Shown: positions 4,340 to 57,746 of the stretch, piece after piece
Position numbering within the stretch: the first letter of the stretch is position 1
Layout of the letters: each line of letters begins with the position of its first letter
Virus record (IMG/VR): IMGVR_UViG_3300050014_000823
Span: 62,001 to 126,000 of that record
Reading direction: 5' to 3' (one strand)
Length of the DNA: 64,000 nucleotides
Notes under the pieces: generated by a model
Databases searched by the model: none
What the model saw: only the letters and a program-made list of their open reading frames with translations
Told to the model about the DNA's origin: nothing
Translations under genes and position numbers: made by a program

Positions 4340-4369
4340 ATTATACGTAAACAAAATTAAAATGTTACA
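4340..4369 (-). promoter_or_regulatory. Phage promoter motif TGTAAC-N18-TATAAT
   Basis: One of 14 equally spaced copies; just upstream of ORF start 4334. Confidence 0.8.
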
Positions 4370-5730
4370 AAAATCAATATAAATCTTCGCTGAAAAGAGT
4401 TTCTTTCTGTTCGGGTATTTGGTTGGCGTAAAATGCTATCTCTGCACCTTCCTTCCTGTCAACAAACCTATTCTTGTTTGTCAAGAAGCCTTGTACGTAT
4501 TCACCTACCTCTGGCGTAACACTTCGTAATCCTGTAATTGATATCATGGTATACATGCAGTGTGGATGTCTGAAACCACAGAAGACCAAGCCTCTGTCAC
4601 AGTTAACAGGCAGAACATTACAGTCAAAGACTTTCTTAAGTACTAAGTCTTTATACCAAATAGCTGCACATAATATTATTTCCATAGTTACCAAATTACA
4701 TCGTCACTTACAACACTAATTGCCCGAATTTTTATTTCAGCATCTTCCTTTTTCTGATTTCTCAGACTACCATCGGAAGTAAGTACACTACCCTTTTCAC
4801 CGAATGTTTGTTTGTATTCGGCATATGCCATTGCTTTACTCGCAGCTTCATTGTAGTCTTTTGCAACCACATACACAGGTGATAATATGTTATTTGCAAA
4901 TGCAAATGACAGGATTCCACCCGATGTTCGTGGTTCTCCAAATTCAACAAAAAACAATTTTCTATCTTCCATATTACATTTTATTTAAGTCTTCAACAAA
5001 GGTTTCTGGTCGCCATATGCCATACTGACCTTCAATCTTTACCCATAAAACCTTATCATCATACCAAATATCCGGGCAAAGCCGGGAGTAATGACCTTTC
5101 TCAATAATGACCTCATCGACAATTACTTTTTGTCCTTCGGTAAAGATTATCTGACCACCAATGGTAAATATTTCACCATTTACAGTTAATGTATCACCTA
5201 CCTTGACCATTAGTCTTCAGGTGTGTCAATTTCACAATAGTGTGTTGGGTGAAACACGTTGGCATTATTATCACCAAGTATACCATTAAACATATTGGCA
5301 AGTGGGTTGTTTTCGTTTGCCCAATGTGGACCTTGAATGTCAATTGATTTCAAGTAACCCGTAGCTACTTTAGTCAACATGTTCGGTCTTTTCTCTGCGA
5401 GTAAGACCGTTACCTTAAAATTCGGTAAGTTATATTTGTCTTCTGCTTCTGTGTTGATTTTAATCCAATTCATTTTCATTTCTTTCATCCCTTAGTATAT
5501 CGTTAAATAACTCTTGTTCGGTAATCGGACGTTCATCGTCTTCACTCTGAGTGTCATCTGGAAGTCCATGATAGTGTGATTTTGAATCATCATCCTGGCT
5601 CACCATTACATCAAAATCGCTGACTGTCTGTTGGTCAGAGTCCTCTTCCATTTTCTGTAATTGATATTCTTCGTGTTCACGCTGATTTGCTTCTTCTTGC
5701 ATCTGTCTTTCGAATTCCCTTTCTTGACGG

Positions 5731-5783
5731 TCTTCCTCAATTTGACGTTCGTCTTCCTCAATTTGACGTTCTTCTTCCTCAAT
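5731..5783. repeat. 21-bp tandem repeat (~2.5 copies) encoding ERQIEED
   Basis: tcttcctcaatttgacgttc(g/t) repeated. Confidence 0.85.
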
Positions 5784-6726
5784 TCTTATTTTAGCTTCTT
5801 CGTCTTTTCTGCCCTGCCAGTAAGCCAAATCTTCTGGTTCATCACTATACTTGTCATGGTCGTAGTCCCTGCGATTATGTTGTGCGTCTTTATGACCAAG
5901 TTTGTTGGCTTCCTGTTCTTCGTCTGTTTCGTAATATCTGCTCATTTTGTGATTGTTATTAATAAAGTTATTTTTCGAAGTCAAAGCCAACAGTGAAGTT
6001 AACTTTTTCGGCTTTAAGTACTTCTTCAATGAAATATCTCATAGAGAGTTCTTTTTTATTCTCCCTATTGACTTTCCAATATTTTCTCTGAATTTTTGCA
6101 CGTTCATTTGAAGTTACCTTGTCCGGATATACGTATTGTACTGCACCAGTACTGTTACAGAACATATTAACATCCCGGTCAGAATAGAACTTAGCTTGGT
6201 ACATGCCATATTCATACCACAAATCAAAGTTTTCTTTGTCGATATGATATACGGTGTCAGTAACTACTTCGTAGTCTTCATCGTAGCCTTCGCCTCTATT
6301 CAATATTATAATTGTACCTCTCATATGTTTTATATCATCTGTGTCAGTTTTGTGCTGCCATATTATTAGTTATTAAAAAATAGTAAATATGCAATCAGTG
6401 TGAAGATGAAGGTAAACAAGAATCTGTACCTTCTCTGTTGACTGTTTTCTTTCTTTATTAAACTCCATACAAGTGTGATTATAAACCACACAATTAAGAA
6501 TGATATGAATCCTGCTCTGTTGTGTATCATCGGTATTGACTGTTAGTTTCACTTACATCAAAGAGTACTGCTTTGATTTCATCCCGTCTCTTTTTCATGT
6601 CTTCGAGATTATTCGTACTCCAACCACCATCTTCGGTACTGATTATCCACTTATTCAAGTATGATAAGTCTTTTCGTAGTTCTGCTATAAGTTTTGCGTT
6701 CATATGAAAATTTGTTGTTACAGGTG

Positions 6727-6756
6727 ATTATACGTAATGTCGGAGAAAATGTTACA
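6727..6756 (-). promoter_or_regulatory. Phage promoter motif TGTAAC-N18-TATAAT
   Basis: attatacgtaatgtcggagaaaatgttaca. Confidence 0.8.
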
Positions 6757-9411: not shown

Positions 9412-10440
9412 TCATATTTTAATCATATTTAATCCTAAAACCAATGCTTCTTCAAAGGCATCCTCATATTTATCCTTACATTCAGAACTTACACTGCAAT
9501 CAGCAATACATTCTTTTAATGTAACTAAACCATAATATTTAAAACAACCTTCCCGGCTTAATTGGGGAATATAAAATGGTTTGACGTATACTTCAATACC
9601 ATGTACTTCTCTTAACCATTTCGCAAGTACTGACTGTGTTGGTGCATATAAGTATTTATTAGTGCTGAATTTAATACTTCGTAGACTTGTTAAATTTTTA
9701 GTATCCTTATGATATACAAATGAACTTTTGACCTTATTATTAATAATGTCACATATTTCAAAGGATAATATTTCCGATATGTGTATATTTATACTTTCAT
9801 TGTTTATAAAAACACCAGTTTTCTCTAAATTTTCTATTGATTTTACTTTAACTTCCTTATAATGTTCACAACTTATTGTAAAATATTTTACTATTTCTTC
9901 TTTACTTAACTTTCTATCTGAAAATAAAAATTCTTTATGATAATCTTTATTATTTAAAACTTCACATATTTTCGAATCACTAATTTTCAATTGTCTACTA
10001 CATTCGCTTATGGAAGGAAATAAATATTCAATATGATTTTTATCATAAGCAAATAAACATCTGCCCACCTTTTCAGCAAAAATACTTCTTCTTTTTTGAA
10101 TTTCTTCCATAGTTAAATCTTTATATGGATAAGATGCTATTTTGGAAACATTAAATCCGTTATCCGTATATGATTTATAATAATCCATCCAGTATTGCTC
10201 TCTTTCTATTAATTTTTCCTTTTCACAAAATTCCTTTACTTCAAATATAAATCCCTCGAAGCCATGTTTGTTACAAAAATTTTGTAATTTAGGATTAGTG
10301 TGCCGATTATTTTTAAGTTTATTCTTATGACAATAAATTCTTGAATACATATTTATTGAACTTCCTATGTAAACCCTCTCAGTATTTTTATGCTTTATAA
10401 TATAAACACCGGGTTTTCTATCTAAAAAAGGTCTTCCCAT
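9412..10440 (-). CDS. GIY-YIG homing endonuclease fused to the C-terminal part of a conserved phage protein
   Basis: GVYIIK..VYIGSS..R, EREQYW, NUMOD1-like FPSISECSRQL; tail YAPTQSVLAKWLREVH. Confidence 0.85.
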   Translation of the reverse strand: MGRPFLDRKPGVYIIKHKNTERVYIGSSINMYSRIYCHKNKLKNNRHTNPKLQNFCNKHGFEGFIFEVKEFCEKEKLIEREQYWMDYYKSYTDNGFNVSKIASYPYKDLTMEEIQKRRSIFAEKVGRCLFAYDKNHIEYLFPSISECSRQLKISDSKICEVLNNKDYHKEFLFSDRKLSKEEIVKYFTISCEHYKEVKVKSIENLEKTGVFINNESINIHISEILSFEICDIINNKVKSSFVYHKDTKNLTSLRSIKFSTNKYLYAPTQSVLAKWLREVHGIEVYVKPFYIPQLSREGCFKYYGLVTLKECIADCSVSSECKDKYEDAFEEALVLGLNMIKI

Positions 10441-11032: not shown

Positions 11033-12112
11033 TCATATCAGTTCGTTTTTAATTATTTTCTGTGTACTCCAATGCCCGTGATTATTCTGTACGTGATTTT
11101 TCCGTACATATTTACCACAGACTTTACGAAATTCTGAGTAATGATACTCTCTTGCAAGTCGTACAACATACCGTTCAATTGTTCCGGGGTTGTTCTCCAT
11201 TTTCTTGTTAAGTTCATTAATGAAGTCCATATCCCAAATACCATCATACATAATTGTTGGTGTAACCAATCCCAATAATTCAAACCATTCCTGTGTTTCA
11301 TCCCAATCCAAGCACATGTTTTTCTCATTCCATATACTAAATGCAAGAAAAATTGATTTTAATGCATTGCCATTTGCTTTGGTATAATGTATTGCATGCT
11401 TTGCATACATATTCTCGCCACATAATCTCCAATCTTCCGGAAGTTCGTAACCAATTTGTGCCCATAGATTTTTAACCCAATTTCTTGAAGAATGACTGTC
11501 AGTATCTAATGAACGTGCATGTATGATATCTTTCATCATAGTAGTGTTCTCGCCATCCATTTTTTCCATAATAATTACACGTTGACCTTCGAATATTGAG
11601 ACATCTTCCATCATGCGGTCATCCCTATTCATGCCAGGTGACCAAGGTAGGTGAAAAGTACGATTGTATTTCACCCTATTTGTGAATTGTCCTAATATAT
11701 TACCTTGATTTAATATCTTTTGAACAGAATCATCATTAAAAAGTTCACCTTTTATTCTCGTACCGTTACGTAAAATTTCATTACCCCACTTGTCATATTC
11801 TACGTCTTCATATAAATGTTGTGGTAATACAATTGTTTTAATACCCGCTAATTCTCTGATTCTATCACACGAAAGAATAGTTTGTTCTGCTTCAATATGA
11901 TGAAGTTCGCAAAGCGTTGCCCCGTTATCAATGAAATATCCCTCACCAAATGGTTTAAATAATCTACGTTCAAGTATGTGATGTGCACTTAAATTAACTA
12001 CTTCACCGAATTGGTTGAATTGTGCCTTTTCACCACAAACAATGCATTTGTATCCATCCCTCTTAAGAACAGCATTTCTAAATTCATCCCGTGTTAATTC
12101 GTCTTTCATCAC
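11033..12112 (-). CDS. HNH domain-RNA ligase fusion
   Basis: RDGYKCIVC..AHHILERR..NGATLCELHH; ligase KYNRTFHLPWS, EKMDGEN, GEN, KYVR. Confidence 0.85.
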   Translation of the reverse strand: MMKDELTRDEFRNAVLKRDGYKCIVCGEKAQFNQFGEVVNLSAHHILERRLFKPFGEGYFIDNGATLCELHHIEAEQTILSCDRIRELAGIKTIVLPQHLYEDVEYDKWGNEILRNGTRIKGELFNDDSVQKILNQGNILGQFTNRVKYNRTFHLPWSPGMNRDDRMMEDVSIFEGQRVIIMEKMDGENTTMMKDIIHARSLDTDSHSSRNWVKNLWAQIGYELPEDWRLCGENMYAKHAIHYTKANGNALKSIFLAFSIWNEKNMCLDWDETQEWFELLGLVTPTIMYDGIWDMDFINELNKKMENNPGTIERYVVRLAREYHYSEFRKVCGKYVRKNHVQNNHGHWSTQKIIKNELI

Positions 12113-12117
12113 AATAA

Positions 12118-12960
12118 TTATTTACTAAAATATTCTTTTATATCTCCGGCACAATTATAATCTTTCTCATATATCACATAATATTTTTTCTTAAGAGATT
12201 TACCAATAATTCTTCTATCTTTTCTTGCATGTTTAATATTACAATATATGAAACCAAAAAAATCAGCTACTTCTCTACAGTTATTAAAGGTATGTGCAAT
12301 TTCAAAAGTATTACTATCAAGGACTAATGTTTTGTTTGACTGTATTTTAGATATTTTATCTCGATACTCCTTAGATTTTCGTGACTTTTGAAATTTTTCG
12401 GAACTTATCATCGCCAACCGATTAATTTCAATTTGACTTGCAGACAAAGTAAATCGTTTACCAAACATACCATTATTTTCTCCCTCATTTGCCTTAGATA
12501 TTTTATCTTTTGTTTCTTGAGTAAGAAAATTACGCTTACCACCCAAATCAATGTTGGTTAGTTTGTTACTTTTATAGTATTCAATCCAAAATATTTCTCT
12601 TTCGTCAATATCTTTAATGTCAACTTCTTCAATTAATTCTATTAATATCTTATTAGCAATACCTTCCTTTATTAAACCAAGTATCCAGTTCTCTTTATGT
12701 GTTAATTGTTTATTCAATTTAACACTACGTACAGTTTCGTAAATATGACTTTTTAATCTTTTATTTAAAGTCAATATTGTTTGTCCAATGTATCTAATCT
12801 CATTAGTCATCGGACATTTTAAACAATATATATATCCTTTCATAACCATAAATACTTGTAATGTTATGATAAGTTCTTGGATATTTAAAATAAAGTGATT
12901 CGCACCGTCTCTTTCGAATACGGATTCCCGGAAAATATCTCTACTTAATAGTGTTTTCAT
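12118..12960 (-). CDS. GIY-YIG homing endonuclease (internal start ~12843) with in-frame vestigial RNA-ligase N-terminus
   Basis: GYIYCL..RYIGQT..RL..H, EREIFWI, NUMOD3 GENNGMFGK. Confidence 0.85.
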   Translation of the reverse strand: MKTLLSRDIFRESVFERDGANHFILNIQELIITLQVFMVMKGYIYCLKCPMTNEIRYIGQTILTLNKRLKSHIYETVRSVKLNKQLTHKENWILGLIKEGIANKILIELIEEVDIKDIDEREIFWIEYYKSNKLTNIDLGGKRNFLTQETKDKISKANEGENNGMFGKRFTLSASQIEINRLAMISSEKFQKSRKSKEYRDKISKIQSNKTLVLDSNTFEIAHTFNNCREVADFFGFIYCNIKHARKDRRIIGKSLKKKYYVIYEKDYNCAGDIKEYFSK

Positions 12961-12965: not shown

Positions 12966-12995
12966 ATTATACGAATATAAATGGAAAATGTTACA
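12966..12995 (-). promoter_or_regulatory. Phage promoter motif TGTAAC-N18-TATAAT
   Basis: attatacgaatataaatggaaaatgttaca. Confidence 0.8.
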
Positions 12996-13159: not shown

Positions 13160-15651
13160 TCATTTGTTATATTTTTCCACAAGATTAAAAATCTTCTTAG
13201 GTATGCTGAGATTTATCTGAGGATTTCTACTTTGAATCTCAAGCAATTTATTTATCATTGACTTTGATAGCCAACTATAATGTATCTGATTTTGAATGCC
13301 ATTAAGATATGCATGGTCCGAATCTGATAATTTTTCTGGGAAAATTCCTGCGTCATTATCGACAATAGCCTTTTTACAACTACCAAGAATTCCATAGATA
13401 AAATTACTATCTCTGGAAGTACTTACCCGATGAAATGCGTAGATTTTACAAGCACTTTTGTCTTTGAGTCCTTTGTTATTCCTTCCGGTAAGTTCAATAC
13501 GACAGATTTCTGGATTTTCAATCCAATTAAAAATCTCGTCTTTCTTTATAAGATGTTCTATGCGTATCATGAATGATTATACGTAAAGCCGGGAAAAATG
13601 TTACAATTATTCCTCTTTTTTTTCGTGATTTTTTTGATTTTTAATGACCATTATGACGGTCCATGTGAAAAGAAAAGCGAAGATTCCGCAACATATATAA
13701 CCCCAAACTACTTCATTGGGTGCGACAGTGGTTTTGTGTACTCCGTAGACATACACTAACAGGTAGAGAGTATAGATTATCCCTTTCACAATCTTCATCC
13801 ATATTAAGGTTATATATAGAAGTTATTTACATTCCTGGTCTGTTCTGTCTTTAAATACTCATAAATAATTAATCGGCAAGCAATTCCTCAATTGTTTTAC
13901 CACAAATAATGCATTTTCCTCCATCACTTTCAAATTTATGTACGTGATGTGTTGGGTCTTCAACTTTCTCAACAGGAATTTCTATCTTACTATAGTCTTT
14001 ATTTTCGCCCATGCTTAAGTAGTTCAACGTATTTAAATTTCAGCACAATCAAGTCCAGACCTGTAGTTAAACCATCAAATGCAGTTTGTAGTGTATTGTG
14101 ATTTACAGGCGTACAAATTTCTACGTATGCATCAAACTCTCGTTGTTTTTGCTCAACAATTTTCCGCAGTTCTTCTACCTTCATCTTGTAGATATTATCT
14201 GCCCAAGTCTCAATTGAGACTTGTTCGTAGATTGGAGATAGGTCTTCTGTCATGGCTATTTATGTAAAATGTTGACGTTAACAGTATCGTTTAACGGTTT
14301 CACAGTACCCCAAGGACTACTAATCCACACATAGGTACTATCATTAATCGGACGAACTCTGATTGTATCTTTCATTGCATCTGCTTGACCCTGTACGTAA
14401 CCTGCTTCCATAATCATTTTCATTTCCAATAAATGATATTGGACATTGGCAGCTTCTTGTTTCTTCGCAACTTTACTTACATAAACAAGCAGTCCCATAC
14501 AGATTAGAAATCCAATGAACATAAGAATCAACCTGTTTCTTTCGCCCTTTGCAAGTTTTTCCATTACTTTGTAAGTTTCTTAACACCAGTTAATTGTGCA
14601 ACCTTAAGTCCTTCGAACTTAAAATTATACTCAAAAAGTGTTGGATGATTTTTCTGTGCCAGAGCAAGTTCACTCTCGTGATAGCGCACACCTTTGAAAA
14701 TAGGTGAGTTACCAAGGTTGGTACGAACTTCTTTGTCTTCGACAGGTGAGTAAACCTTTACGGGTTCTAATGTAGCTTTGTCCATGTTGCGTATATAAAT
14801 TTAGTTAGCAAACTTACTGTTATTTTATCGGATAATCAAGACTTATTCAAAAAATTGTGGGGAAAAAGTATATGGTCCAAGAAACCCCACGATGTCTGGT
14901 TGCATTTCCCAATCGTAACCGCCACTATAATAATCGTATGAACCCAAGTAACGAAGTTCAACTATCATAATATTAGTTGTCGGGAATACAAACTTTGACA
15001 AGTTTTCTTCTGGTTCGGGTTTAAATGGAGTCTTAGCAAGCAATGCCTTGAAATTAATATCTTTAAACAACTCAACTATGCCCGATTCGCCAAACTCATA
15101 ATCCAACTGATGGTCAACAGGATATATATTAATGAAAATAATCTTCTGTGGTTCACGTACTTCTTCTTGACCTACAAATTGCAAGTATTGTCCTGCATCG
15201 CATAGGTGTCCGTCACCCCGGAGACTATACTCAGGAAGATGGTCAAATACTTCCTTGTGGTTATTATGAACTTTCCATAGTTCAGCAATGAAATTTTCTG
15301 AAATTTCATGCAGCTCTACCGACATTAAACATCTGATTGTTTTTGACATTATCTTGTATATGTTACGAAATAGTAGTGAAATTCTCCATTAACATCGAAT
15401 TGCTTCTCAACCGATTTTTTGACAATAAGTTCATCTGACTCATGCATTCTCAAAGCATCAATGGAAAGCGGTTCGTTCAGTCCCAACAATCCGTTACCTG
15501 AACGTTCCAATATTTTACCAATGATTACACATTCACCATTACGTGTATTGAACAGGCATGAAATATCTTCATCGCCACCTAAGTCCCATTTTTCCTGCTT
15601 ATCTAACTGCACCAATATGTCGTAGATAAAATATTGATTTGTACGTGCCAT
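13160..15651 (-). other. Run of small hypothetical ORFs
   Basis: Packed ORFs 13160-13570, 13607-13798, 13999-14253, 14256-14564, 14564-14785, 14843-15349, 15349-15651. Confidence 0.6.
13576..13605 (-). promoter_or_regulatory. Phage promoter motif TGTAAC-N18-TATAAT
   Basis: attatacgtaaagccgggaaaaatgttaca. Confidence 0.8.
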
Positions 15652-19222: not shown

Positions 19223-19252
19223 ATTATACGTAAACCAAAGAAAAATGTTACA
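19223..19252 (-). promoter_or_regulatory. Phage promoter motif TGTAAC-N18-TATAAT
   Basis: attatacgtaaaccaaagaaaaatgttaca. Confidence 0.8.
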
Positions 19253-22474: not shown

Positions 22475-22504
22475 ATTATACGTAAAATAATTTAAAAGGT
22501 TATA
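22475..22504 (-). promoter_or_regulatory. Phage promoter motif (variant TATAAC-N18-TATAAT)
   Basis: attatacgtaaaataatttaaaaggttata. Confidence 0.7.
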
Positions 22505-23721: not shown

Positions 23722-23751
23722 ATTATACGTAAATAATTTAATAATGTTACA
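23722..23751 (-). promoter_or_regulatory. Phage promoter motif TGTAAC-N18-TATAAT
   Basis: attatacgtaaataatttaataatgttaca. Confidence 0.8.
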
Positions 23752-30948: not shown

Positions 30949-30978
30949 ATTATACGAAATTGTCCCGGAAATGTTACA
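30949..30978 (-). promoter_or_regulatory. Phage promoter motif TGTAAC-N18-TATAAT
   Basis: attatacgaaattgtcccggaaatgttaca. Confidence 0.8.
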
Positions 30979-36152: not shown

Positions 36153-36362
36153 TTAGTTTGTAGTGCCTTGAATTTCATATGGTTGAGTATTTTTGAAAAT
36201 ATAAACATCGTAAATTGCATCACGTAAATGATTCAGTGCTTTTTCCTCAGTTTCACCCTCTGCAATTATTTCCGGGAATTCTTTGAAAAAGGCAGTAAAC
36301 CCACCAATTTTTGGGTCTTCCACAAATATGGGAGTTAATGGTATGGTTACAAGTGCTATCAT
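36153..36362 (-). CDS. HicB-like antitoxin domain protein
   Basis: DPKIGGFTAFFKEFPEIIAEGETEEKALNHLRDAI. Confidence 0.75.
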   Translation of the reverse strand: MIALVTIPLTPIFVEDPKIGGFTAFFKEFPEIIAEGETEEKALNHLRDAIYDVYIFKNTQPYEIQGTTN

Positions 36363-36703
36363 TGTTTGAATGTTATGGTTGTTCTTGTTGTTTTTAAACC
36401 TAATTCAACTGCATGCTTTTTTATTGTGCCGTAAAACGAACTCCAAATAATCTGAACCACATACGCAAATGCATTGTCGCTCTTTGTGGGGTCGTAATGT
36501 ATGCAATGTTTACAAGCTGCAACATATGCCTCTGATTCACAGAGAATTTTTATGTTATCGCTTATGCATTTATACCTTGTCTTTGGCGTTTCAAGCCAAA
36601 CAACTTCCATAAGAAGTCTTTTTAAATCGAGAGTCAGTACATCGGTTGCCCGATAGTTAATTATCTCCATCCGTAATGCGGTGTTTAGTTTATCTGATGT
36701 CAT
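36359..36703 (-). CDS. Short gp55-like sigma-factor region-2 protein
   Basis: HYDPTKSDNAFAYVVQIIWSSF resembles the gp55-family FDP.KS.N.FAY.TQI motif. Confidence 0.55.
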   Translation of the reverse strand: MTSDKLNTALRMEIINYRATDVLTLDLKRLLMEVVWLETPKTRYKCISDNIKILCESEAYVAACKHCIHYDPTKSDNAFAYVVQIIWSSFYGTIKKHAVELGLKTTRTTITFKQ

Positions 36704-38947: not shown

Positions 38948-38977
38948 ATTATACGTAATTAATTCAAAAAGGTTTCT
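38948..38977 (-). promoter_or_regulatory. Phage promoter motif (degenerate upstream box)
   Basis: attatacgtaattaattcaaaaaggtttct. Confidence 0.6.
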
Positions 38978-42479: not shown

Positions 42480-42509
42480 ATTATACGTAAATAAAAATAA
42501 AATGTTACA
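42480..42509 (-). promoter_or_regulatory. Phage promoter motif TGTAAC-N18-TATAAT
   Basis: attatacgtaaataaaaataaaatgttaca. Confidence 0.8.
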
Positions 42510-46328: not shown

Positions 46329-46358
46329 ATTATACGTAAGCGATTGGATAATGTTACA
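46329..46358 (-). promoter_or_regulatory. Phage promoter motif, leftward at the divergence point
   Basis: attatacgtaagcgattggataatgttaca. Confidence 0.8.
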
Positions 46359-46534: not shown

Positions 46535-46564
46535 TGTAACCTTTTATTTTTAAATTCGTATAAT
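46535..46564 (+). promoter_or_regulatory. Phage promoter motif, rightward at the divergence point
   Basis: tgtaaccttttatttttaaattcgtataat. Confidence 0.8.
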
Positions 46565-48270: not shown

Positions 48271-49290
48271 ATGTTGTTATTTAAAATTTTAGCTTGGCTC
48301 ATATTAATTTATGGGATTGTTGCACTCATCCTGCGCACAGTAAAGGTTGTTAATGAAGTCCCGGATGGTGACAAAGACAGCTACGGCAGACAGAAAACCA
48401 AAAAAGTCAGTGAAAGCATCAAATTGCCATTCGCAATTCCTTCACTTATTTTAGGTTTAATTACTGCTGTTACTCTTGCACTTGTTACAATCGTTGGCGC
48501 ACAGGAAGTTGGCGTTATTACTACCCCGCAGGGAGTCGTAGAACAGCCGTTACACACTGGTTGGCATATGGTGATGCCTTGGAATAAAGTTCATTTTATG
48601 GACAAAACCGTATGGGTATATACTTGTGCACAAGCCATTAAAGAAGGCGCAAAGCCTAATGCAGACGCAATCTGGGCACCGACTAAGGACGGTATTAAGA
48701 TGGGTTTTGACGTATCAGTTTCATGGAGAATTGTCGGTAATGAAGCACCGTGGATTTATCAGAACGTAACTGAGAATGATGGTGGTAATTCAGGTAGATA
48801 TATTTGGCTCGAAGAAAACGTAATCAGACCCAAATTAAAATCCGCTATGGCATTAACAGTATCTAACTACACCCCTATCGAAGCCTACAGTACCAAAAGA
48901 CAGGACATTCAGAACGATATTCTTAATCGTATGATTGCCGAATGTAAGCAGTACAAGTTGCAGATTGACAACGTTGACGTAAGAGAGGTTTACTACAACC
49001 CCGAATACGAAACATCAATCAACAACAAGAAACTTGCAGAACAGGAAGCATTACGTCTTGTGGAAGTTACCAAACAGCGTGAGGAACTTAAGAAACAGGA
49101 AGCCATCAACAAGGATATCGCTATCTTGAAGGCAGAAGGTGAAGCTAAGTCATTACAGATTAAAGGTAACTCAATCTCTAACAACCCGAAGATTATCCAG
49201 CTTGAGTGGGTAAACAAATGGGATGGAAAATTACCTATCTACATGATGGGTGATGCGCAGAGTGTCATGATGAACATGAATAATAAATAG
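48271..49290 (+). CDS. SPFH/prohibitin (band 7) membrane protein
   Basis: TM helices; GWHMVMPW, TKDG, AEGEAKS, KWDGKLP. Confidence 0.9.
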   Translation: MLLFKILAWLILIYGIVALILRTVKVVNEVPDGDKDSYGRQKTKKVSESIKLPFAIPSLILGLITAVTLALVTIVGAQEVGVITTPQGVVEQPLHTGWHMVMPWNKVHFMDKTVWVYTCAQAIKEGAKPNADAIWAPTKDGIKMGFDVSVSWRIVGNEAPWIYQNVTENDGGNSGRYIWLEENVIRPKLKSAMALTVSNYTPIEAYSTKRQDIQNDILNRMIAECKQYKLQIDNVDVREVYYNPEYETSINNKKLAEQEALRLVEVTKQREELKKQEAINKDIAILKAEGEAKSLQIKGNSISNNPKIIQLEWVNKWDGKLPIYMMGDAQSVMMNMNNK

Positions 49291-50698: not shown

Positions 50699-50724
50699 AA
50701 GCAGGAAAATTTTCCTGCTTTTTT
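50699..50724 (+). terminator. Intrinsic terminator
   Basis: AAGCAGGAAA..TTTCCTGCTT-TTTT. Confidence 0.75.
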
Positions 50725-50753
50725 GTAACATTTTCATTTCCTTTACGTATAAT
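50724..50753 (+). promoter_or_regulatory. Phage promoter motif TGTAAC-N18-TATAAT
   Basis: tgtaacattttcatttcctttacgtataat. Confidence 0.8.
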
Positions 50754-50758: not shown

Positions 50759-51553
50759 ATGGCAAAGAGAAAACCTATAGACCCCGAAGTACGCAAAAAA
50801 GAAATGCTTGAAACAGAGTGTAGAGAAATGCGTGAAATGATTGTTGTTGGTATCTTACCACTCAACCCTACGAGATTTTTCGCTGTTGGCGAAAGAGTAC
50901 AGTGGGGAGCATTGGAAGAAACCTACATCAGACAAATCTTTGAAGGTGGCGTATATTATCTCATTGAAAGTATAAATGTTAAACGTTACAGAGACCAACC
51001 CGGTGAAAATGAAATTCGTTACATGGGATGGATTGACCTTTACAAATACAATCAACGTCAACCCACAAATTTTGCCAAACCCGAAGAACATCGTATAAAT
51101 TATCTCAACTCAGGAATATCTTCATTACTTAATATGGTGTATCATTCGGGAGTTGATTTTAATGTTGACTATCAACGTGACCATGTATGGACTCTCGATG
51201 ACAAGATTGCTTTAATTGACAGTATATTTGGCAATGTTGATATTGGCAAGTTTACGTTTGTTCAGCGTGATTTCCGTGTTGAGGGTAAAATTTATGAGAT
51301 TCTTGACGGTAAGCAAAGACTCTCAACCATTGCAGAATTTGTCGAAGGCAGATTTTTATATCATGGTTATACGTTTGCAGAATTAAGTGGTTATGATAAG
51401 CACAGGTTCGAAGCACACCCAATTTCTTGGGGATATTTGGAAAGACCAACTAAACGTGCTATATTTGAAACCTTTATTAAACTCAACACCTGCGGAAGAC
51501 CGATGAAGAACGAAGATATTGACAAAGTAAAAAAATTATTGGATGAACTCTAA
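50759..51553 (+). CDS. DUF262 (ParB-like/GmrS) domain protein
   Basis: YQRDHVW..LIDSI, ILDGKQRL, FIKLN. Confidence 0.85.
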   Translation: MAKRKPIDPEVRKKEMLETECREMREMIVVGILPLNPTRFFAVGERVQWGALEETYIRQIFEGGVYYLIESINVKRYRDQPGENEIRYMGWIDLYKYNQRQPTNFAKPEEHRINYLNSGISSLLNMVYHSGVDFNVDYQRDHVWTLDDKIALIDSIFGNVDIGKFTFVQRDFRVEGKIYEILDGKQRLSTIAEFVEGRFLYHGYTFAELSGYDKHRFEAHPISWGYLERPTKRAIFETFIKLNTCGRPMKNEDIDKVKKLLDEL

Positions 51554-53533: not shown

Positions 53534-54139
53534 ATGTATATGATTGGAATAAAAGAAGCAGCAGAATTACTTGGAATTACTCCCAAAACATTAAGATTAT
53601 GGGAGAAAAACGGTAAAATAACGAGTCATAGGACTGAAGGTCAACATAGAAGATATGTAGTTTCAGAACTTATCGGTAGTCGTGGAGACAAACTATTAAC
53701 AATTGCTTATGCCAGAGTATCAAGTTATGACCAGAAAGATGATTTAAAACGACAAGAATTGGTATTGGAAAGTTATTGTGCGAGTAAAGGATTTGAATTT
53801 GAATTAATTTCTGATTTAGGTTCTGGAATGAACTACAAGAAAAAAGGACTTATCAGATTAATAAAACTGATTTGCAGTAATCAAATTGATAGATTGGTAA
53901 TCACACATAAAGACAGATTATTGAGATTTGGAAGTGAGTTAATTTTTATGCTTTGCGAAATCTTTGCTGTTGAAGTTTGTATAATTAATAGGAGTGAAGA
54001 TAGCACCTTTGAAGAAGATTTAGCCAACGATGTTTTGGAAATTATAACTGTCTTCAGTGCAAGATTATATGGAAGTCGAAGCCATAAAAATAAACAGATA
54101 ATACAACAATTAAAACAGGTAGCCAAAGATTTGAAATGA
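53534..54139 (+). CDS. tnpA: IS607 transposase
   Basis: YARVSS, DLGSG, HKDRLLRFG, FSARLYGSRS. Confidence 0.95.
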   Translation: MYMIGIKEAAELLGITPKTLRLWEKNGKITSHRTEGQHRRYVVSELIGSRGDKLLTIAYARVSSYDQKDDLKRQELVLESYCASKGFEFELISDLGSGMNYKKKGLIRLIKLICSNQIDRLVITHKDRLLRFGSELIFMLCEIFAVEVCIINRSEDSTFEEDLANDVLEIITVFSARLYGSRSHKNKQIIQQLKQVAKDLK

Positions 54140-55311
54140 AGTCAATTAAGGTAAGATTAGAACTAAACAATAAGCAGACTACACTTGCCAATAAACACGC
54201 AGGAGTGGCAAGATATGCTTATAATTGGGGAAAATCTGTCTGTGATTTGGCAATACAAAATAAGGAGCACAGACCAACAGCAATTGATTTACATAAGAAA
54301 TTTGTTAAAGAAGAAAAAACTATTAAGTCTTGGTTGTATGAAGTATCCAAGTGCAGCCCACAACAAGGTTTAAGAAATTTGGATGAAGCATACAAAAGAA
54401 CATTCAAAGTTAAAAGTAGTCATTTTCCTAAGTTCAAAAAGAAAGGACAACACGATAGTTTTTATCTGGAAGGTGCTATCAAAACTAATAGTAATAAAAT
54501 TAAAGTACCTAAGTTTGGTTGGTTAAGATGTTCAGAAACATTACCAGAATGTGAAGTCAAAAATGTTGTTATAAGTAAAACTGCTAATCAATGGTTTATT
54601 GCTTTTAAAATACCATTTGAACCACAGATTACTAATAAGGTGAATGGTGTTGTCGGTGTTGATTTAGGTATTAAAACACTTGCAGTATTGTCAGATGGTA
54701 AAGTATTTGAAGCAGTTAAACCATATAAACGAAACAAACGGAAATTAAAAATACTACAAAGAAGATTAAGTAAGAAACAGAAAGGTAGCCAAAATAGAAA
54801 AAAAGCCTGTGTGAAGATAGCAAAACTACATTACAGGATAGCAAACATTAGAAAAGATACCACACATAAATTAACAACATATTTAAGTAAAAACCACACT
54901 GAATGTGTTATTGAAGACCTTTGTGTTCGTGGAATGAGTAAAAATCACAAATTAGCATCAGCCATATTGGATGGTGGATTTTCAGAGTTCAGAAGACAAT
55001 TAGAATATAAGTGTCAATGGTATGGTTCAACACTAACAATAGTTGATAGATTTTATCCAAGTTCAAAGACTTGTAGTGGATGTGGTAATGTTAAAAAAGA
55101 ACTAAAATTATCTGAAAGAGAATATGTTTGTGAGAATTGCGGATTGGTGATAGATAGAGACCTAAATGCTGCAATTAATTTAAGAAATAAGTCGGTGAGT
55201 TACACCGAATCAGCCTGTGGAGTGCCTAAACAACTTGATACTTTTGTATCTGGTGGCGCAATGAATCAGGAAGTAAATTGCAATGTTCAACATTGTGTAA
55301 GTTTTACGTAA
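54136..55311 (+). CDS. tnpB: RNA-guided endonuclease TnpB
   Basis: RuvC GVDLG, IEDL, DRDLNAA; zinc finger CSGC..CENC. Confidence 0.95.
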   Translation: MKSIKVRLELNNKQTTLANKHAGVARYAYNWGKSVCDLAIQNKEHRPTAIDLHKKFVKEEKTIKSWLYEVSKCSPQQGLRNLDEAYKRTFKVKSSHFPKFKKKGQHDSFYLEGAIKTNSNKIKVPKFGWLRCSETLPECEVKNVVISKTANQWFIAFKIPFEPQITNKVNGVVGVDLGIKTLAVLSDGKVFEAVKPYKRNKRKLKILQRRLSKKQKGSQNRKKACVKIAKLHYRIANIRKDTTHKLTTYLSKNHTECVIEDLCVRGMSKNHKLASAILDGGFSEFRRQLEYKCQWYGSTLTIVDRFYPSSKTCSGCGNVKKELKLSEREYVCENCGLVIDRDLNAAINLRNKSVSYTESACGVPKQLDTFVSGGAMNQEVNCNVQHCVSFT

Positions 55312-55387: not shown

Positions 55388-55750
55388 ATGGAAAGACAAA
55401 TTAAATTTAGAGCATGGGACGAAGGTAATAAAATCATGCACAACAACTTTCAATTCATTCGTTCAGGAGAAGAAGGTAATGATTGGATAGTATTCACATC
55501 CGATAAACAAACTCTTAAAGATAAACAGCATCCATTAGAAAATCCTTATTTTCAACAACAATTGAAAATAATGGAATGGTCTGGAATCGAAAACATCTTC
55601 GAAGGAGATATTGTCACATTAGGCGAAATTGATGGAGAGGGTGTAGTTAAATACAATGAAGACAGATTTTATGTTGATTATGGAACTACGCATACAAGAG
55701 TGAGTAAAAATCATAAAGTATTAGGAAATATTTACGAAAAAACTGAATAA
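55388..55750 (+). CDS. YopX-family protein
   Basis: IKFRAWD..IFEGDIV..VLGNIYE. Confidence 0.85.
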   Translation: MERQIKFRAWDEGNKIMHNNFQFIRSGEEGNDWIVFTSDKQTLKDKQHPLENPYFQQQLKIMEWSGIENIFEGDIVTLGEIDGEGVVKYNEDRFYVDYGTTHTRVSKNHKVLGNIYEKTE

Positions 55751-56193
55751 AATGAGTGGAGAAGTAGAATTCGGAAGATGTGATATTTGTAAAGAGGATA
55801 AACCTCTTGAAAGGACATACTATCATTATGACATTAAATGTGAATGTCATTCACCCCGTCATTTTGAATTGGTCAGGCATTGTAAAGATTGTGTTCCAGT
55901 AGAACCTCTTGAAACAACCTTAACTATTAAAATAGAGACATTAAGAATATTATTACACTTGCCGAAACATTAATAATATGAAATCACAATATAAAATAAT
56001 TAAAAAATTTAAACCCACAAAAATAAACGGGATTGATTTTTATTCTGATGTACAGGTGTGGAAAATGATTGATATGGCATACGAACAAATTCGAAACAAA
56101 GAAGAAATATCAGAACCAATGGAATCAGGCGCAGAGTTTTATTGCCCTGATTGTGGTAAAAGTGTTTACAGTTGTGGATGTTAATTTATAAAT

Positions 56194-57327
56194 ATGAAAC
56201 TAATCCGTTCAACCAAATGTAGTCTGAAATTCGCAACAGCGAAGAAGCAGAATGAACTATCGGTCATCTTGAGTGAATACTCGAAGGTTGTTAATATCTT
56301 CATTGACTATTTCTGGTTGAATGCTGATAAAGCAACTAAAGGTGAACTTCTTAAACCAGTTGTTGATATTCCCGAAACATGGTTATCAGCACGACTGAGA
56401 AAAGTAGCAGCCAGAGAAGCAATCGACATGATTAATGCCAGTAAGCAAAGGTGGAAAGAAAAAGCAGTGAAGCCAGTTCATAAAGGTAACAGAATGTATG
56501 TTAGTTGCACCATTGCTGATTTGGTATCCACAAAGAACAACGGATATAAAACCGAAGACAGTTTGAGGTTTGATGCTTGGTTACACATAGCAAGTGTTGG
56601 TAACAAAATGATAATGGACTTACCGATTAAATATCACAAACATTTCAACAAATATAATAACATCGGTAAGAGATTGAATTCATATATCATCACCAAGAAT
56701 TATGTCCAGTTCAGTTTTGAGATAATCACCGAGACAAAAAAGGAAGGTAAACATTGCATCGGTATCGACACTGGAATAAACGCACTGGCAAGTCTTAACA
56801 ACGGCAATCAGTATGGTCTGGACATCAAAGGTTGTATCGAGAGAGTTAAAAGATGTAAGCAGAAGTCCAAAGGTTATTATGTTGCTAAAAGAGCGTTGAA
56901 ACAAAGAATTGATGAAACAGCGAAAGAGATATTAGTAAAAGAAAATCCAGATTTAATTGTTGTTGAACAACTAAAAAAGATGGGATATAAAAGTAAAGCC
57001 AAACGCTTGTTGGCTAAAAATATCAGGCGTTCTATCGGAACTTGGAATTGGAAGTATTGGCTCAAAAGGTTAGAAGCACAATGCGAGATTAACCGTGTTA
57101 GTTTTCGCAGTGTAGCACCTTATTACACCAGTACAACCTGTCCAGTATGTGGTCATTCTGATAGGGGAAATCGACTCGGTGAAGTGTTCTTGTGTCTATC
57201 ATGTGGTCACAAAGACAATGCAGATATAAATGCGGGTAAGAACATTTTGAATCGGTTTCTCACGGGACAATACGGTGCTCGTTACAAGGAAATAAAGGAT
57301 GTGCAAGTTTGTGCAGATTTATTTTAA
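56194..57327 (+). CDS. tnpB: Second, divergent TnpB
   Basis: GIDTG, VVEQL, TSTTCPVC..CLSC..NADINAG. Confidence 0.9.
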   Translation: MKLIRSTKCSLKFATAKKQNELSVILSEYSKVVNIFIDYFWLNADKATKGELLKPVVDIPETWLSARLRKVAAREAIDMINASKQRWKEKAVKPVHKGNRMYVSCTIADLVSTKNNGYKTEDSLRFDAWLHIASVGNKMIMDLPIKYHKHFNKYNNIGKRLNSYIITKNYVQFSFEIITETKKEGKHCIGIDTGINALASLNNGNQYGLDIKGCIERVKRCKQKSKGYYVAKRALKQRIDETAKEILVKENPDLIVVEQLKKMGYKSKAKRLLAKNIRRSIGTWNWKYWLKRLEAQCEINRVSFRSVAPYYTSTTCPVCGHSDRGNRLGEVFLCLSCGHKDNADINAGKNILNRFLTGQYGARYKEIKDVQVCADLF

Positions 57328-57716
57328 CGGTAATGCAGAAGCATTGCTACAAATGCAGAAAATGGGATTAAAAATCGATTTTAATTAAAAAATTATAAAA
57401 TTTTATAATTGTTTACAGTATTTATTGTAAACAATCGTAAAATGGCAAAATATATTAAAGAAACAGCAAGAATTGACGTTAAGTTCATTGACGCAGCGAC
57501 AGAAGAAACTATCCTTGAAGTACCAGACAGAAACTGGATGAATGTGGGTGAGATATTGAGTGCTCGTCACGGAGATATGATACTTCAAGCAAAACTTAAA
57601 GGTAAACGATTACCAAAAAAAGTATTGATTTTGGTACTATCTGAATTGGTTCTGGAAGAATAACGTGTTTTTTAAGTGTTTTAAATGCGCATAGAAGTGA
57701 TTTTATGCGCATTTTT

Positions 57717-57746
57717 TGTAACATTTTTCATCGGTTTACGTATAAT
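57717..57746 (+). promoter_or_regulatory. Phage promoter motif TGTAAC-N18-TATAAT
   Basis: tgtaacatttttcatcggtttacgtataat. Confidence 0.8.

What the first reader, a model, noticed from the sequence alone, without database searches (positions are those of the whole stretch)
4340..57746. Fourteen copies of an invariantly spaced phage promoter TGTAAC-N18-TATAAT (core ACGTATAAT)
Seen at 4340, 6727, 12966, 13576, 19223, 22475, 23722, 30949, 38948, 42480, 46329 (- strand) and 46535, 50724, 57717 (+ strand). Each spans exactly 30 bp, is co-oriented with local genes and lies just upstream of a start codon. It does not match the Bacteroidota TTTG/TAnnTTTG consensus, which also occurs here (35756, 39983, 46416, 59219). 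Inference: it is read by a phage-encoded sigma factor or RNA polymerase, or by a host ECF sigma.
Basis: partly seen in the sequence, partly recalled or inferred. Interest (0 to 1): 0.6.

Follow-up and report, generated by a model that had tools for sequence, protein, structure and literature searches.

The report
ECF-type promoter class of jumbo phage
The repeated 30-bp element is a real promoter class of an uncultivated 299-kb phage of Bacteroidota; it has the architecture read by ECF-type sigma factors, the phage encodes two such sigmas, and nearly the same sequence sits in front of the main sigma-factor gene (rpoD) of many Flavobacteriia.

Summary
All 14 sites are at the stated coordinates: 12 exact and 2 with changes in the -35 box, against 0.02 expected. 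All are co-oriented with an ORF that starts 5-39 nt downstream.

The window is part of a 299,144-bp peat-metagenome phage with a T4-type capsid gene and no detectable RNA polymerase. Genome-wide there are 37-39 sites and none in the reversed-pattern control. All but one lie in the first 120 kb.

The motif is better written TGTAAC(A)TTT-N-TT(A/T)CGTATAAT, that is AAC-N16-CGT, the ECF (group 4) sigma architecture.

The phage encodes two ECF sigmas outside the window, both behind host-type TTTG/TAnnTTTG promoters, and a gp55-like late sigma inside the window. A second, -10-only motif (GTATTTATA) precedes late genes.

Seventeen related phage records carry the same motif. Wherever the first sigma's ortholog was located, the dense site array starts just downstream of it.

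Unexpectedly, TGTAAC-N16/17-CGTATAAT is also the conserved single-copy element upstream of rpoD in about 80 Flavobacteriia and Bacteroidia genomes. A host sigma of the same specificity therefore probably exists.

Unresolved: which sigma reads the sites (phage sigma-1, phage sigma-2 or a host ECF). No RNA data exist.

The parts
4340..4369 (-). ECF-type promoter (exact). ATG of the 147-aa ORF 3891-4334 lies 5 nt after TATAAT (predicted leaderless).
6727..6756 (-). ECF-type promoter (exact). 58-aa ORF starts 23 nt downstream.
12966..12995 (-). ECF-type promoter (exact, TCGTATAAT). ATG of the 280-aa NUMOD3 protein (12118-12960) lies 5 nt downstream.
13576..13605 (-). ECF-type promoter (exact). ATG of the 136-aa ORF 13160-13570 lies 5 nt downstream.
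19223..19252 (-). ECF-type promoter (exact). 174-aa ORF 18681-19205 starts 17 nt downstream.
22475..22504 (-). ECF-type promoter, -35 variant TATAAC. ATG of the 129-aa AAA_33 kinase-like ORF 22079-22468 lies 6 nt downstream.
23722..23751 (-). ECF-type promoter (exact). By the sequence, the 152-aa ORF 23224-23682 starts 39 nt downstream; one search picked an upstream in-frame ATG at 33 nt.
30949..30978 (-). ECF-type promoter (exact, TCGTATAAT), with a hairpin straddling the -35 box. 75-aa ORF 30695-30922 starts 26 nt downstream.
38948..38977 (-). ECF-type promoter, -35 variant AGAAAC. It is the nearest ECF-type site upstream of a same-strand gene run that starts with ATP-dependent DNA ligase (37548-38924) and includes the gp55-like sigma gene.
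42480..42509 (-). ECF-type promoter (exact), preceded by a terminator-like hairpin plus T-run. 74-aa ORF starts 15 nt downstream.
46329..46358 (-). ECF-type promoter (exact), one of a divergent pair. 89-aa ORF starts 15 nt downstream.
46535..46564 (+). ECF-type promoter (exact, TGTAACC / TCGTATAAT), the other of the divergent pair. 69-aa ORF 46575-46784 starts 10 nt downstream.
50724..50753 (+). ECF-type promoter (exact), preceded by a terminator-like hairpin plus T-run. ATG of the 264-aa GmrSD_N/DUF262 protein (50759-51553) lies 5 nt downstream.
57717..57746 (+). ECF-type promoter (exact), preceded by a hairpin plus T-run. 327-aa ORF (ATG at 57772, ending 58755) starts 25 nt downstream. Its leader is nearly identical to that of the 30949 site.
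36359..36703 (-). gp55-like late sigma gene (114 aa). It lies downstream of the 38948 site on the same strand and is the presumed reader of the second motif, GTATTTATA.
   Evidence: phrog_234, E 5.6e-9

Best explanation
The 14 elements, and 37-39 genome-wide, are promoters of the ECF (group 4 sigma-70) type. The -35 box is TGTAAC(A)TTT, the spacer is fixed at 16 bp between AAC and CGT, and the -10 box is TT(A/T)CGTATAAT. An A-rich GAAAATA block lies about 18 nt upstream of the -35 box. Transcription is predicted to start 5-7 nt after TATAAT.

These sites form the early-to-middle transcription class of a 299-kb T4-core jumbo phage of a Bacteroidota host. The class drives many small ORFs of unknown function, nucleic-acid enzymes (DNA ligase, SF1 helicase, RNA ligases, homing endonucleases, PurA) and the gp55-like late sigma.

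The phage has no detectable polymerase, so the host core RNA polymerase is redirected to these sites by an ECF sigma. Most likely this is one or both of the two ECF sigmas the phage encodes. Sigma-1 lies at G000 30,929-31,495, at the head of the densest array of sites. Sigma-2 lies at G000 145,850-146,533, in an operon with the primase gene. Both genes sit behind host sigma-A-type promoters.

The implied cascade is: host sigma-A, then phage ECF sigma(s), then the TGTAAC-N16-CGTATAAT class (which includes the gp55-like sigma gene), then the GTATTTATA late class.

Shown here: the motif, its statistics, orientation and conservation; the sigma genes; and their co-occurrence with the motif. Inferred: that the sites are promoters, the start site, which sigma acts, and the temporal order.
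For: Statistics: 12 exact sites against 0.02 expected in the window; 37 against 0 in the reversed-pattern control genome-wide. The mismatch distribution is sharply bimodal: 37 sites at 0-1 mismatch and only 5 at 2.

Position: 37 of 39 sites have an ATG-ORF of at least 45 aa 5-77 nt downstream on the same strand. Eight have the ATG 5-6 nt after TATAAT (binomial p 1e-4), the position expected for +1. Sixteen have it at 23-27 nt.

Conservation outside the positions the pattern fixes: ATTTTC after the -35 box, TTT(A/T) before CGT, C after TATAAT, and the upstream GAAAATA block.

ECF architecture: AAC-N16-CGT is invariant. Both phage sigmas pass TIGR02937 sigma70-ECF (71.7 and 62.8 bits against a cut-off of 42.9) and have only regions 2 and 4.

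No RNA polymerase families were found. A T4 Gp23-type capsid gene is present. This fits the sigma-encoding, polymerase-less group 2 jumbo phages described in PMC7824862.

Host-type promoters lie before sigma-1 (TATATTTG, conserved in relatives) and before the primase-sigma-2 operon (TTTG-N19-TATATTTG).

Relatives: 5 records with sigma-1 orthologs (32-48% identity) carry 5-27 sites against 0-1 in the control. Twelve further records carry 1-33 exact sites against 0. Ten of those 12 encode Sigma70_r2 proteins, and the two without are fragments no more than 28% complete.

Synteny: the dense array starts directly downstream of the sigma-1-type gene in G000, L015, G003, G004, G005, G414 and G416.

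Co-variation: the sigma-1-adjacent array is N17/CGTATAAG in G004 and CGTT(A/T)A in G005. The dispersed sites in those genomes keep N16/CGTATAAT.

The gp55-like sigma gene lies downstream of the 38948 site on the same strand.

Experimental precedent: the sigma gp47 of Salmonella phage 7-11 reads the bipartite promoter GTAAtg-N16-aCTA (PMC8948821).
Against: There is no transcript evidence. Only DNA runs from peat hold this phage.

The same sequence is the conserved upstream element of host rpoD in about 80 Bacteroidota genomes. A host sigma with this specificity therefore probably exists and could read the phage sites without any phage sigma.

Sigma-1 and sigma-2 cannot be told apart. In G000 the array next to sigma-1 and the dispersed sites share one core motif. 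The dispersed class, to which all 14 window sites belong, keeps its -10 box (CGTATAAT/CGTATAwT) in G000, G004 and G005, though its -35 box is looser in G005 (wAAAC). This would fit sigma-2, whose region 4 is nearly invariant, or a host sigma, as well as sigma-1.

Sigma-1's own upstream copy is degenerate (TGTAAC-N16-CGTTAAAG) and its CGT is not conserved in L015. The autoregulation typical of ECF sigmas is therefore not shown.

Gene calls came from a crude longest-ORF procedure.
Confidence: 0.6

Rival explanations
1. The sites are ECF-type promoters, but they are read by a host ECF sigma: the one that reads the conserved TGTAAC-N16/17-CGTATAAT element in front of host rpoD. The phage has copied a host promoter. 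Its own ECF sigmas serve other targets or only reinforce the host factor.
For: The pattern TGTAACATTT-N10-TTWCGTATAAT hit 80 loci in cellular genomes. In 76 of them it lies 26-68 nt (one case 152 nt) upstream of a 287-aa RpoD-type sigma (NCBIfam RpoD E 1e-90). It occurs once per genome; the other hits are at control level. In a 401-genome Bacteroidota sample the six rpoD-linked hits have N17 (4) or N16 (2). A conserved host ECF family (PG0214/GFO_1088) carries TGTAAC-N16-CGTCGTAAT upstream of its own gene in 6 of 6 genomes examined. The dispersed class in the phages keeps CGTATA(A/T)T while the phage sigma-1 diverges to 32% identity.
Against: Every sufficiently complete motif-bearing phage record examined encodes ECF sigmas. 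The arrays start right after the phage sigma gene. The array motif changes between phages (N17/CGTATAAG, CGTTAA), as expected if it tracks a phage factor. ECF sigmas are normally held inactive by anti-sigma factors (general knowledge), which would make them an unreliable resource for a phage. The host of this phage is unknown. The exact motif was seen before rpoD in only about 1.5% of sampled Bacteroidota.
Confidence: 0.25
2. The sites are read by a primary-type sigma through the canonical TATAAT -10 hexamer, with TGTAAC acting as a poor -35 box. They would then be ordinary sigma-70-like early promoters.
For: TATAAT is the canonical sigma-70 -10 hexamer. The element also precedes rpoD itself, so autoregulation by the primary sigma is conceivable.
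Against: Bacteroidota sigma-A uses TTTG/TAnnTTTG (PMC7366714). That consensus is present separately in this phage, including before the sigma genes. The invariant C of AAC and the invariant CG before TATAAT are not sigma-70 determinants. The best TTGACA-like register (TTGTAA) gives a 19-bp spacer. There is no TG extended -10.
Confidence: 0.05
3. The repeats are not primarily promoters. They are recombination or shuffling cassettes, or binding sites of a phage DNA-binding protein.
For: About 9-10 of 37 sites are fused to a terminator-like hairpin, like the PeSL cassettes that mediate shuffling in T4-like phages (PMC4122927). The array lies in a region of many small ORFs of unknown function.
Against: PeSLs are themselves promoters plus terminators, so this does not exclude promoter function. 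Strand concordance with genes is strict (37 of 39 sites have a same-strand ORF downstream). The bipartite spacing is fixed. The ATG sits at the predicted +1. The motif matches a host gene's upstream element.
Confidence: 0.04
4. The sites are read by a phage-encoded RNA polymerase.
For: Some jumbo phages do this (PMC7598289, listed).
Against: No Rpb2_6, Rpb1_2 or T7-type polymerase domains were found in the 91%-complete record. The T7-type control rang nowhere, so that one test is weak. The genome has the T4-type capsid and sigma genes typical of polymerase-less jumbo phages.
Confidence: 0.02

Closest known systems
Late promoters of Salmonella phage 7-11 read by its sigma gp47 (PMC8948821); single-element phiEco32 gp36 promoters
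   Same: A phage-encoded sigma with regions 2 and 4 redirects the host core polymerase to a bipartite promoter, GTAAtg-N16-aCTA. The -35 box is GTAA-like, the spacer is 16 bp, and the start lies 6-9 nt downstream. Early genes use the host primary sigma.
   Different: That phage is a 90-kb podovirus of Enterobacteria with 8 late promoters. Here a 299-kb T4-core phage of Bacteroidota has about 39 early/middle sites, a CGTATAAT -10 box, two ECF sigmas and a separate gp55-like late sigma. Nothing here is tested biochemically.
Bacterial ECF sigma promoters, e.g. Bacillus subtilis SigW TGAAAC-N16-CGTA and SigX TGTAAC-N17-CGAC (consensus quoted from memory, not checked here)
   Same: AAC in the -35 box, CGT in the -10 box, and a rigid 16-17-bp spacer. 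Phage sigma-1 scores on the SigW/SigZ/Sig70_bacteroi1 models.
   Different: No anti-sigma partner was found and no clear autoregulatory copy. The -10 box extends to a full TATAAT. The regulon is a phage genome.
T4 transcription cascade, and the PeSL composite terminator-promoter cassettes of T4-like phages (PMC4122927, PMC2839356)
   Same: A T4-type core (Gp23 capsid, gp55-like late sigma, -10-only late motif). Arrays of small ORFs, each with its own promoter. Some promoters are fused to the preceding terminator hairpin.
   Different: T4 early and PeSL promoters are host sigma-70 promoters, and T4 middle promoters use MotA/AsiA. Here the equivalent class is of ECF type and is presumably served by phage sigmas.
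Conserved rpoD-upstream element of Flavobacteriia/Bacteroidia (found here; no description found in the papers searched)
   Same: The same -35 (TGTAACATTT) and -10 (TTACGTATAAT) boxes, with a spacer of 17 or 16 bp, at promoter distance from the ATG.
   Different: It is single-copy per cellular genome and its reader is unknown. The link to this phage's actual host is unproven.
Promoter motif 2 (PM2) of Bacteroides thetaiotaomicron (PMC7366714; reader still called elusive in PMC11697453)
   Same: A non-sigma-A Bacteroidota promoter with -10 and -30 boxes and an unidentified factor.
   Different: The PM2 sequence could not be retrieved from the text or supplements. Identity with this motif is untested; this is a lead only.

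Membership tests
ECF (group 4 sigma-70) dependent promoter | -35 box containing AAC | tested here: met
   AAC is invariant in 37 of 37 sites, but the search pattern that defined these sites fixes TGTAAC. The independent evidence is the reversed-pattern control of 0 hits and the conservation in relatives.
ECF (group 4 sigma-70) dependent promoter | -10 box containing CGT, 16-17 bp after AAC | tested here: met
   CGT is present in 36 of 37 sites at exactly 16 bp (one site has CAT). Relatives use 16 or 17 bp.
ECF (group 4 sigma-70) dependent promoter | A cognate sigma with only regions 2 and 4 is available | tested here: met
   Two phage genes pass TIGR02937. They co-occur with the motif in 10 of 12 further records, plus G003, G004 and G005.
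ECF (group 4 sigma-70) dependent promoter | Transcription starts about 6-8 nt downstream of the -10 box and depends on that sigma | not testable with these tools
   No RNA runs hold this phage. The only indirect support is an ATG at the predicted +1 in 8 sites.
ECF (group 4 sigma-70) dependent promoter | Autoregulatory copy upstream of the sigma gene | tested here: inconclusive
   Sigma-1 has TGTAAC-N16-CGTTAAAG upstream. The CGT is lost in relative L015. The G005 ortholog has a class-(a) copy upstream.
Bacteroidota sigma-A promoter (TTTG at -33, TAnnTTTG at -7) | TAnnTTTG about 7 nt before the start | tested here: not met
   Absent from the motif. It is present at separate sites in the phage.
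Canonical sigma-70 promoter (TTGACA-N17-TATAAT) | -35 TTGACA at 17 +/- 1 bp from TATAAT | tested here: not met
   TATAAT is present, but the best -35 register (TTGTAA) gives a 19-bp spacer. The invariant C and CG positions are unexplained by this model.
T4-type late promoter (gp55-dependent, -10 only) | A single AT-rich 8-mer with no -35 box | tested here: not met
   The finding's motif is bipartite. The separate GTATTTATA motif fits this family instead.
PeSL-like composite terminator-promoter cassette | A stem-loop terminator fused to an early promoter between small ORFs | tested here: inconclusive
   Strong hairpins (dG <= -11, z <= -3.3) abut or straddle the -35 box at 9 of 37 sites; the rest have none. 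A role in shuffling was not tested.

The most novel reading that the evidence does not exclude
The phage's main early/middle promoter copies the conserved promoter of the host's primary-sigma gene rpoD. On this reading Flavobacteriia and Bacteroidia have an undescribed circuit in which an ECF-type sigma drives rpoD from TGTAAC-N16/17-CGTATAAT. A clade of jumbo phages plugs about 40 genes into that circuit, either by using the host factor or by bringing anti-sigma-free mimics of it. Those mimics would also turn up host rpoD during infection. The motif might be the same as the orphan PM2 promoter class of Bacteroides.
Probability: 0.3. Interest if true: 0.8.

Novelty: new variant of a known kind. 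Interest (0 to 1): 0.62.

Why it matters
Transcription programmes of uncultivated jumbo phages, and of Bacteroidota phages in general, are almost unknown. Here one genome gives a readable three-tier programme: host sigma-A sites, an ECF-type class, and a gp55-type late class, with three phage sigma genes. The programme is shared by at least 17 other records.

The ECF-type promoter is short, rigid and probably independent of the host's main (sigma-A) promoters. With its sigma it could serve as a genetic part for Bacteroidota.

The match to the rpoD upstream element points to a conserved, undescribed control of the primary sigma gene in Flavobacteriia. It also gives a direct way to find the factor: test the phage sigmas and the PG0214-family ECF on that promoter.

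Tried and rejected
RNA evidence: the run search found only five DNA runs from peat and no RNA. Read laying was therefore not used, and start sites could not be mapped.

GenBank phages: there is no nucleotide match. The sigma-1 protein matches crAss-like and Lak phages at no more than 30% identity.

A single-protein locus search for sigma-1 in IMG/VR found nothing. An alignment of homologs was needed.

Several short contigs carrying sigma-1 homologs had no DNA available.

More distant phage ECF loci (20-26% identity) show no enrichment of AAC-N16-CGT within 20 kb.

No second ECF-type class was found in G000 beyond sigma-1's own degenerate copy.

Separating sigma-1 from sigma-2 targets in G000 by flanking positions gave only spacer and leader differences.

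Pattern slip: my long collection pattern had one N too many, giving N17. This used the only genome-contig scan but revealed the rpoD element. The N16 version could then be run only on viral contigs and on a 401-genome sample, where most hits were at control level.

Host reader: a search for a host ECF gene autoregulated by the exact motif in two Winogradskyella genomes (30 of 56 ECF loci examined) found none. BLAST of the phage sigmas against those ECFs gave only 21-34% identity with no preferred family.

The PM2 sequence could not be obtained.

RNA polymerase families were not found. No tRNAs were found in the window or near the two ORF-less sites.

Full report
**1. Observation**

The two remaining sites carry a variant -35 box: TATAAC at 22475 and AGAAAC at 38948. 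Both are recovered at 1-2 mismatches.

Eleven of the 14 sites have ACGTATAAT and three have TCGTATAAT. An extra ACGTATAAT at 34974 has no -35 box and is coding.

All 14 sites point toward an ATG-initiated ORF that starts 5-39 nt downstream on the same strand.

**2. Context**

The window is bases 62,001-126,000 of a 299,144-bp IMG/VR virus record, which CheckV estimates as 91% complete. The only sequencing runs that hold it are DNA runs from peat.

The genome contains:
- a T4 Gp23-type capsid gene (E 2.9e-64);
- no detectable multisubunit or T7-type RNA polymerase (the T7-type control rang nowhere, so that test is weak);
- no use of Shine-Dalgarno sequences (22 of 421 starts against 29 in a control window);
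- about 20 intergenic sites of the Bacteroidota sigma-A type, (T)TTG-N19-21-TAnnTTTG.

This fits the "group 2" jumbo phages, which lack a polymerase but encode sigma factors (PMC7824862). It also fits a Bacteroidota host.

**3. Genome-wide picture of the motif**

At one mismatch or fewer there are 37 sites and none for the reversed pattern. The mismatch distribution is bimodal: 29 sites at 0, 8 at 1, 5 at 2, and 60 at 3. The reversed sequence gives 0, 0, 8 and 58. Two of the 2-mismatch sites look real: G000 41064 and window 38948.

Thirty-six of the 37 sites lie in G000 1-120 kb, and 19 are packed into 31.5-46.3 kb.

Positions that the search pattern leaves free are also conserved: ATTTTC after TGTAAC, TTT(A/T) before CGT, C after TATAAT, and a GAAAATA block 12-18 nt upstream of the -35 box. 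The element is therefore better written as gAAAATA-N11-TGTAACATTTtc-N6-TTT(A/T)CGTATAATc.

Its invariant skeleton, AAC-N16-CGT, is the hallmark of ECF (group 4) sigma promoters. The B. subtilis SigW and SigX consensus sequences I compare it with are quoted from memory.

**4. Evidence that the sites are promoters**

Thirty-seven of 39 sites have an ATG-ORF of at least 45 aa 5-77 nt downstream. The distances are bimodal:
- Eight ORFs start 5-6 nt after TATAAT (binomial p 1e-4). This places the A of the ATG where +1 is expected if G and T of CGT sit at -12 and -11, so these mRNAs are predicted to be leaderless.
- Sixteen ORFs start at 23-27 nt. In the 31-46 kb array these leaders begin with a conserved GTAACCAA(A/T)AC.

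Nine sites have a strong hairpin (dG <= -11, z <= -3.3). In some it lies just upstream with a T-run that abuts TGTAAC. In others it straddles the -35 box, so that the conserved TTT before CGT doubles as the U-tract. These are compact terminator-promoter modules, like the PeSL cassettes of T4-like phages (PMC4122927).

**5. Sigma factors in the phage**

Three sigma-like genes were found.
- **Sigma-1** (G000 30,929-31,495, 188 aa): Sigma70_r2 plus r4_2; TIGR02937 71.7 bits; best subfamily Sig70_bacteroi1.
- **Sigma-2** (G000 145,850-146,533, 227 aa): r2 plus r4 with a long Cys/Ser/Thr-rich linker; overlaps the end of the primase gene.
- **gp55-like protein** (window 36359-36703, minus strand, 114 aa): matches phrog_234 "late sigma transcription factor" at E 5.6e-9.

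Sigma-1 is preceded by TATATTTG. This box is conserved in relatives, with a proper TTTG-N19 in L015 and TATCTTTG in G004. The primase-sigma-2 operon has a perfect TTTG-N19-TATATTTG.

The gp55-like gene is preceded on the same strand by the DNA ligase gene and four small ORFs, and the nearest upstream ECF-type site is at 38948.

Other genes in the window's ECF-site-bearing gene runs (operon membership not established) include an SF1 helicase, two RNA ligases, GIY-YIG and NUMOD endonucleases, adenylosuccinate synthetase, a methyltransferase, a DUF262/GmrSD_N protein, and many small ORFs with no match.

**6. A second motif**

GTATTTAT(A)nn(A)AA is the most enriched upstream 8-mer in the genome: 97 copies, 63 of them within 80 nt of a start. 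The ATG typically lies 14-17 nt downstream, and there is no -35 box.

It dominates the 120-299 kb region of large genes. One copy heads the operon that contains the capsid gene. By analogy with T4 (gp55, TATAAATA) I assign it to the gp55-like sigma. This is inference.

**7. Relatives**

Sigma-1 homologs at 87-31% identity exist in metagenomes.

L015 (sigma-1 48% identical) has the same layout. The sigma gene sits behind TTTG-N19-TATATTTG and is followed by small ORFs, each preceded by TGTAACATT-N-(A/T)CGTATAAC and the GTAACCAAAAC leader. GTATTTATAG sites are also present.

Five records with sigma-1 orthologs carry 5-27 sites, against 0-1 in the control. Twelve further records found through the N16 pattern carry 1-33 exact sites, against 0. 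Ten of those 12 have Sigma70_r2 genes, and the two without are fragments no more than 28% complete.

In G414 and G416 (the latter 321,624 bp, complete, with terminal repeats) the dense array again begins directly downstream of a sigma gene.

G004 and G005 (363 and 366 kb, both complete) each have a sigma-1 and a sigma-2 ortholog and two promoter sub-classes:
- Next to sigma-1: TGTAACCTTT-N17-CGTATAAG in G004, and YGYAACCTT-N16-CGTT(A/T)A in G005.
- Dispersed elsewhere: N16-CGTATAAT in G004, and wAAACAtTT...TTTACGTATAwT in G005. These are often leaderless.

So the array class co-varies with the fast-evolving sigma-1 (32-35% identity between genomes). The dispersed class keeps its -10 box, though its -35 box is looser in G005, and sigma-2's region 4 is nearly invariant.

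In G000 the two classes share one core. They differ only in TGAAAC variants, spacer composition and leaders. All 14 window sites are of the dispersed kind. I therefore cannot say whether sigma-1, sigma-2 or both read them.

**8. The host connection**

Through a slip my long collection pattern had a 17-bp spacer. In the GTDB genome collection it hit 80 loci, almost all in Flavobacteriaceae, with some other Bacteroidia and Chitinophagaceae. The genera include Winogradskyella, Aquimarina, Polaribacter, Galbibacter, Flavobacterium and Capnocytophaga.

In 76 of the 80 the element lies 26-68 nt (one case 152 nt) upstream of a 287-aa protein that begins MRQLKITKQVTNRE. This protein scores as RpoD at E 1e-90.

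The element is single-copy per genome, and one-mismatch hits are at control level. In a sample of 401 Bacteroidota genomes, six have TGTAAC-N16/17-CGTATAAT before rpoD (four N17, two N16). The other hits are chance.

Thus the phage promoter is, box for box, the conserved upstream element of the host primary-sigma gene. A host sigma with this specificity presumably exists.

A candidate is the PG0214/GFO_1088-family ECF. Its genes carry TGTAAC-N16-CGTCGTAAT upstream in six of six genomes examined. The phage sigmas are not close to any particular Winogradskyella ECF (21-34% identity).

I found no description of this rpoD element in the papers searched. The orphan "PM2" promoter class of B. thetaiotaomicron, which has -10 and -30 boxes and a still-elusive reader (PMC7366714, PMC11697453), may be related. 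Its sequence could not be retrieved.

**9. Verdict**

The elements are very probably promoters of the ECF type, forming the early/middle class of a sigma cascade in a T4-core jumbo phage of Bacteroidota.

Reading by phage-encoded ECF sigma(s) is the best-supported mechanism. The evidence is co-occurrence, synteny and co-variation in relatives. A host ECF sigma of identical specificity is a serious rival because of the rpoD match. A phage polymerase and the host primary sigma are unlikely.

Phage sigma cascades and phage ECF-like sigmas with bipartite promoters are known (phage 7-11 gp47, PMC8948821), so this is a new variant of a known kind. The link to the host rpoD promoter is the part that would surprise a specialist and is directly testable.

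Noticed in passing
window 17753-17760(-), 27064-27071(+), 30615-30622(-), 34511-34518(+), 41896-41903(-), 46017-46024(-), 46986-46993(+), 57418-57425(+), 60256-60263(+), 62507-62514(-); genome-wide 97 copies: A second phage-specific motif, GTATTTAT(A)nn(A)AA, with no -35 box. The ATG typically lies 14-17 nt downstream. It dominates the 120-299 kb region of large genes and heads the operon that holds the capsid gene. It is conserved in relatives G004, G005 and L015. It is probably the late promoter class read by the gp55-like sigma. Its core TATTTATA is the reverse complement of the T4 late box TATAAATA (T4 box recalled from memory).
   Followed up: partly
loci L121-L200, L224, L277, L279, L280, L282, L283 (cellular genomes): TGTAACATTT-N9/10-TTACGTATAAT is a conserved single-copy element 26-68 nt upstream of the 287-aa RpoD-type sigma gene in about 80 Flavobacteriia and Bacteroidia genomes. 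Its reader is unknown, and I found no description in the papers searched.
   Followed up: partly
L296-L301 (six flavobacterial genomes): The conserved PG0214/GFO_1088-family ECF sigma genes carry TGTAAC-N16-CGTCGTAAT 60-70 nt upstream of their ATG. This looks like an autoregulatory promoter and makes the family a candidate host reader of the rpoD and phage motif.
   Followed up: partly
window 36359-36703 (-): A 114-aa protein matches the T4 gp55 late-sigma family (phrog_234, E 5.6e-9). It is much shorter than T4 gp55 (about 185 aa, recalled from memory).
   Followed up: partly
G000 31.5-46.3 kb (outside the window); also L015, G004, G005: Array promoters are followed by a conserved A/C-rich leader, GTAACCAA(A/T)AC, that begins about 5 nt after TATAAT. 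It is conserved across relatives. It could be a translation-enhancing, unstructured leader or a regulator binding site.
   Followed up: no
window 46393-46423 (+), 59190-59226 (+), about 35756 (-), about 39983 (-): Host-type (T)TTG-N19-21-TAnnTTTG promoters. At 46393 the ATG follows the -7 box by 4 nt, and the site lies between the divergent ECF-type pair at 46329 and 46535.
   Followed up: partly
window 54136-55311 (+) and 56194-57327 (+); L009:307-993 (+), next to sigma-2: Two full-length TnpB/IS605 OrfB (Cas12f1-like TNB) genes in tandem inside the phage, and a truncated one convergent with sigma-2. Relative L015 has an IS607-like resolvase plus OrfB just upstream of its sigma-1. A recent paper links dCas12f homologs to ECF sigmas in Bacteroidetes (PMC13472631). 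No such link was tested here.
   Followed up: no
L185 (JBAZIW010000001.1, 362,763 bp): The phage record G004 (IMGVR_UViG_3300029288_000055, 362,763 bp) appears in GenBank as a scaffold of a 'Candidatus Paceibacterota' MAG. It is probably a mis-binned jumbo phage genome.
   Followed up: no
G000 37949 (+) and 52287 (-) (outside the window): Two exact promoter copies have no ORF of at least 45 aa within 130 nt downstream. The first is followed by a GC-rich structured stretch. The second has a tandem duplication, ACGTATAATACGTATAAT. These may be non-coding transcripts. ARAGORN found no tRNA near the first site; the second was not scanned.
   Followed up: partly
window 30923-30948 (-) and 57747-57771 (+): The leaders after the 30949 and 57717 promoters are nearly identical (cagtcataactttaaaa...), although the downstream ORFs differ. 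This is consistent with cassette-like duplication of promoter plus leader.
   Followed up: no
window 9412-10440, 11033-12112, 12118-12960, 32786-33829 (all -): A GIY-YIG and a NUMOD3 homing-endonuclease-like gene flank an RNA ligase gene, and a second RNA ligase with a PHA02142 OB-fold lies at 32786-33829. There is also an adenylosuccinate synthetase (40001-41131) and an SPFH/Band 7 protein (48271-49290).
   Followed up: no
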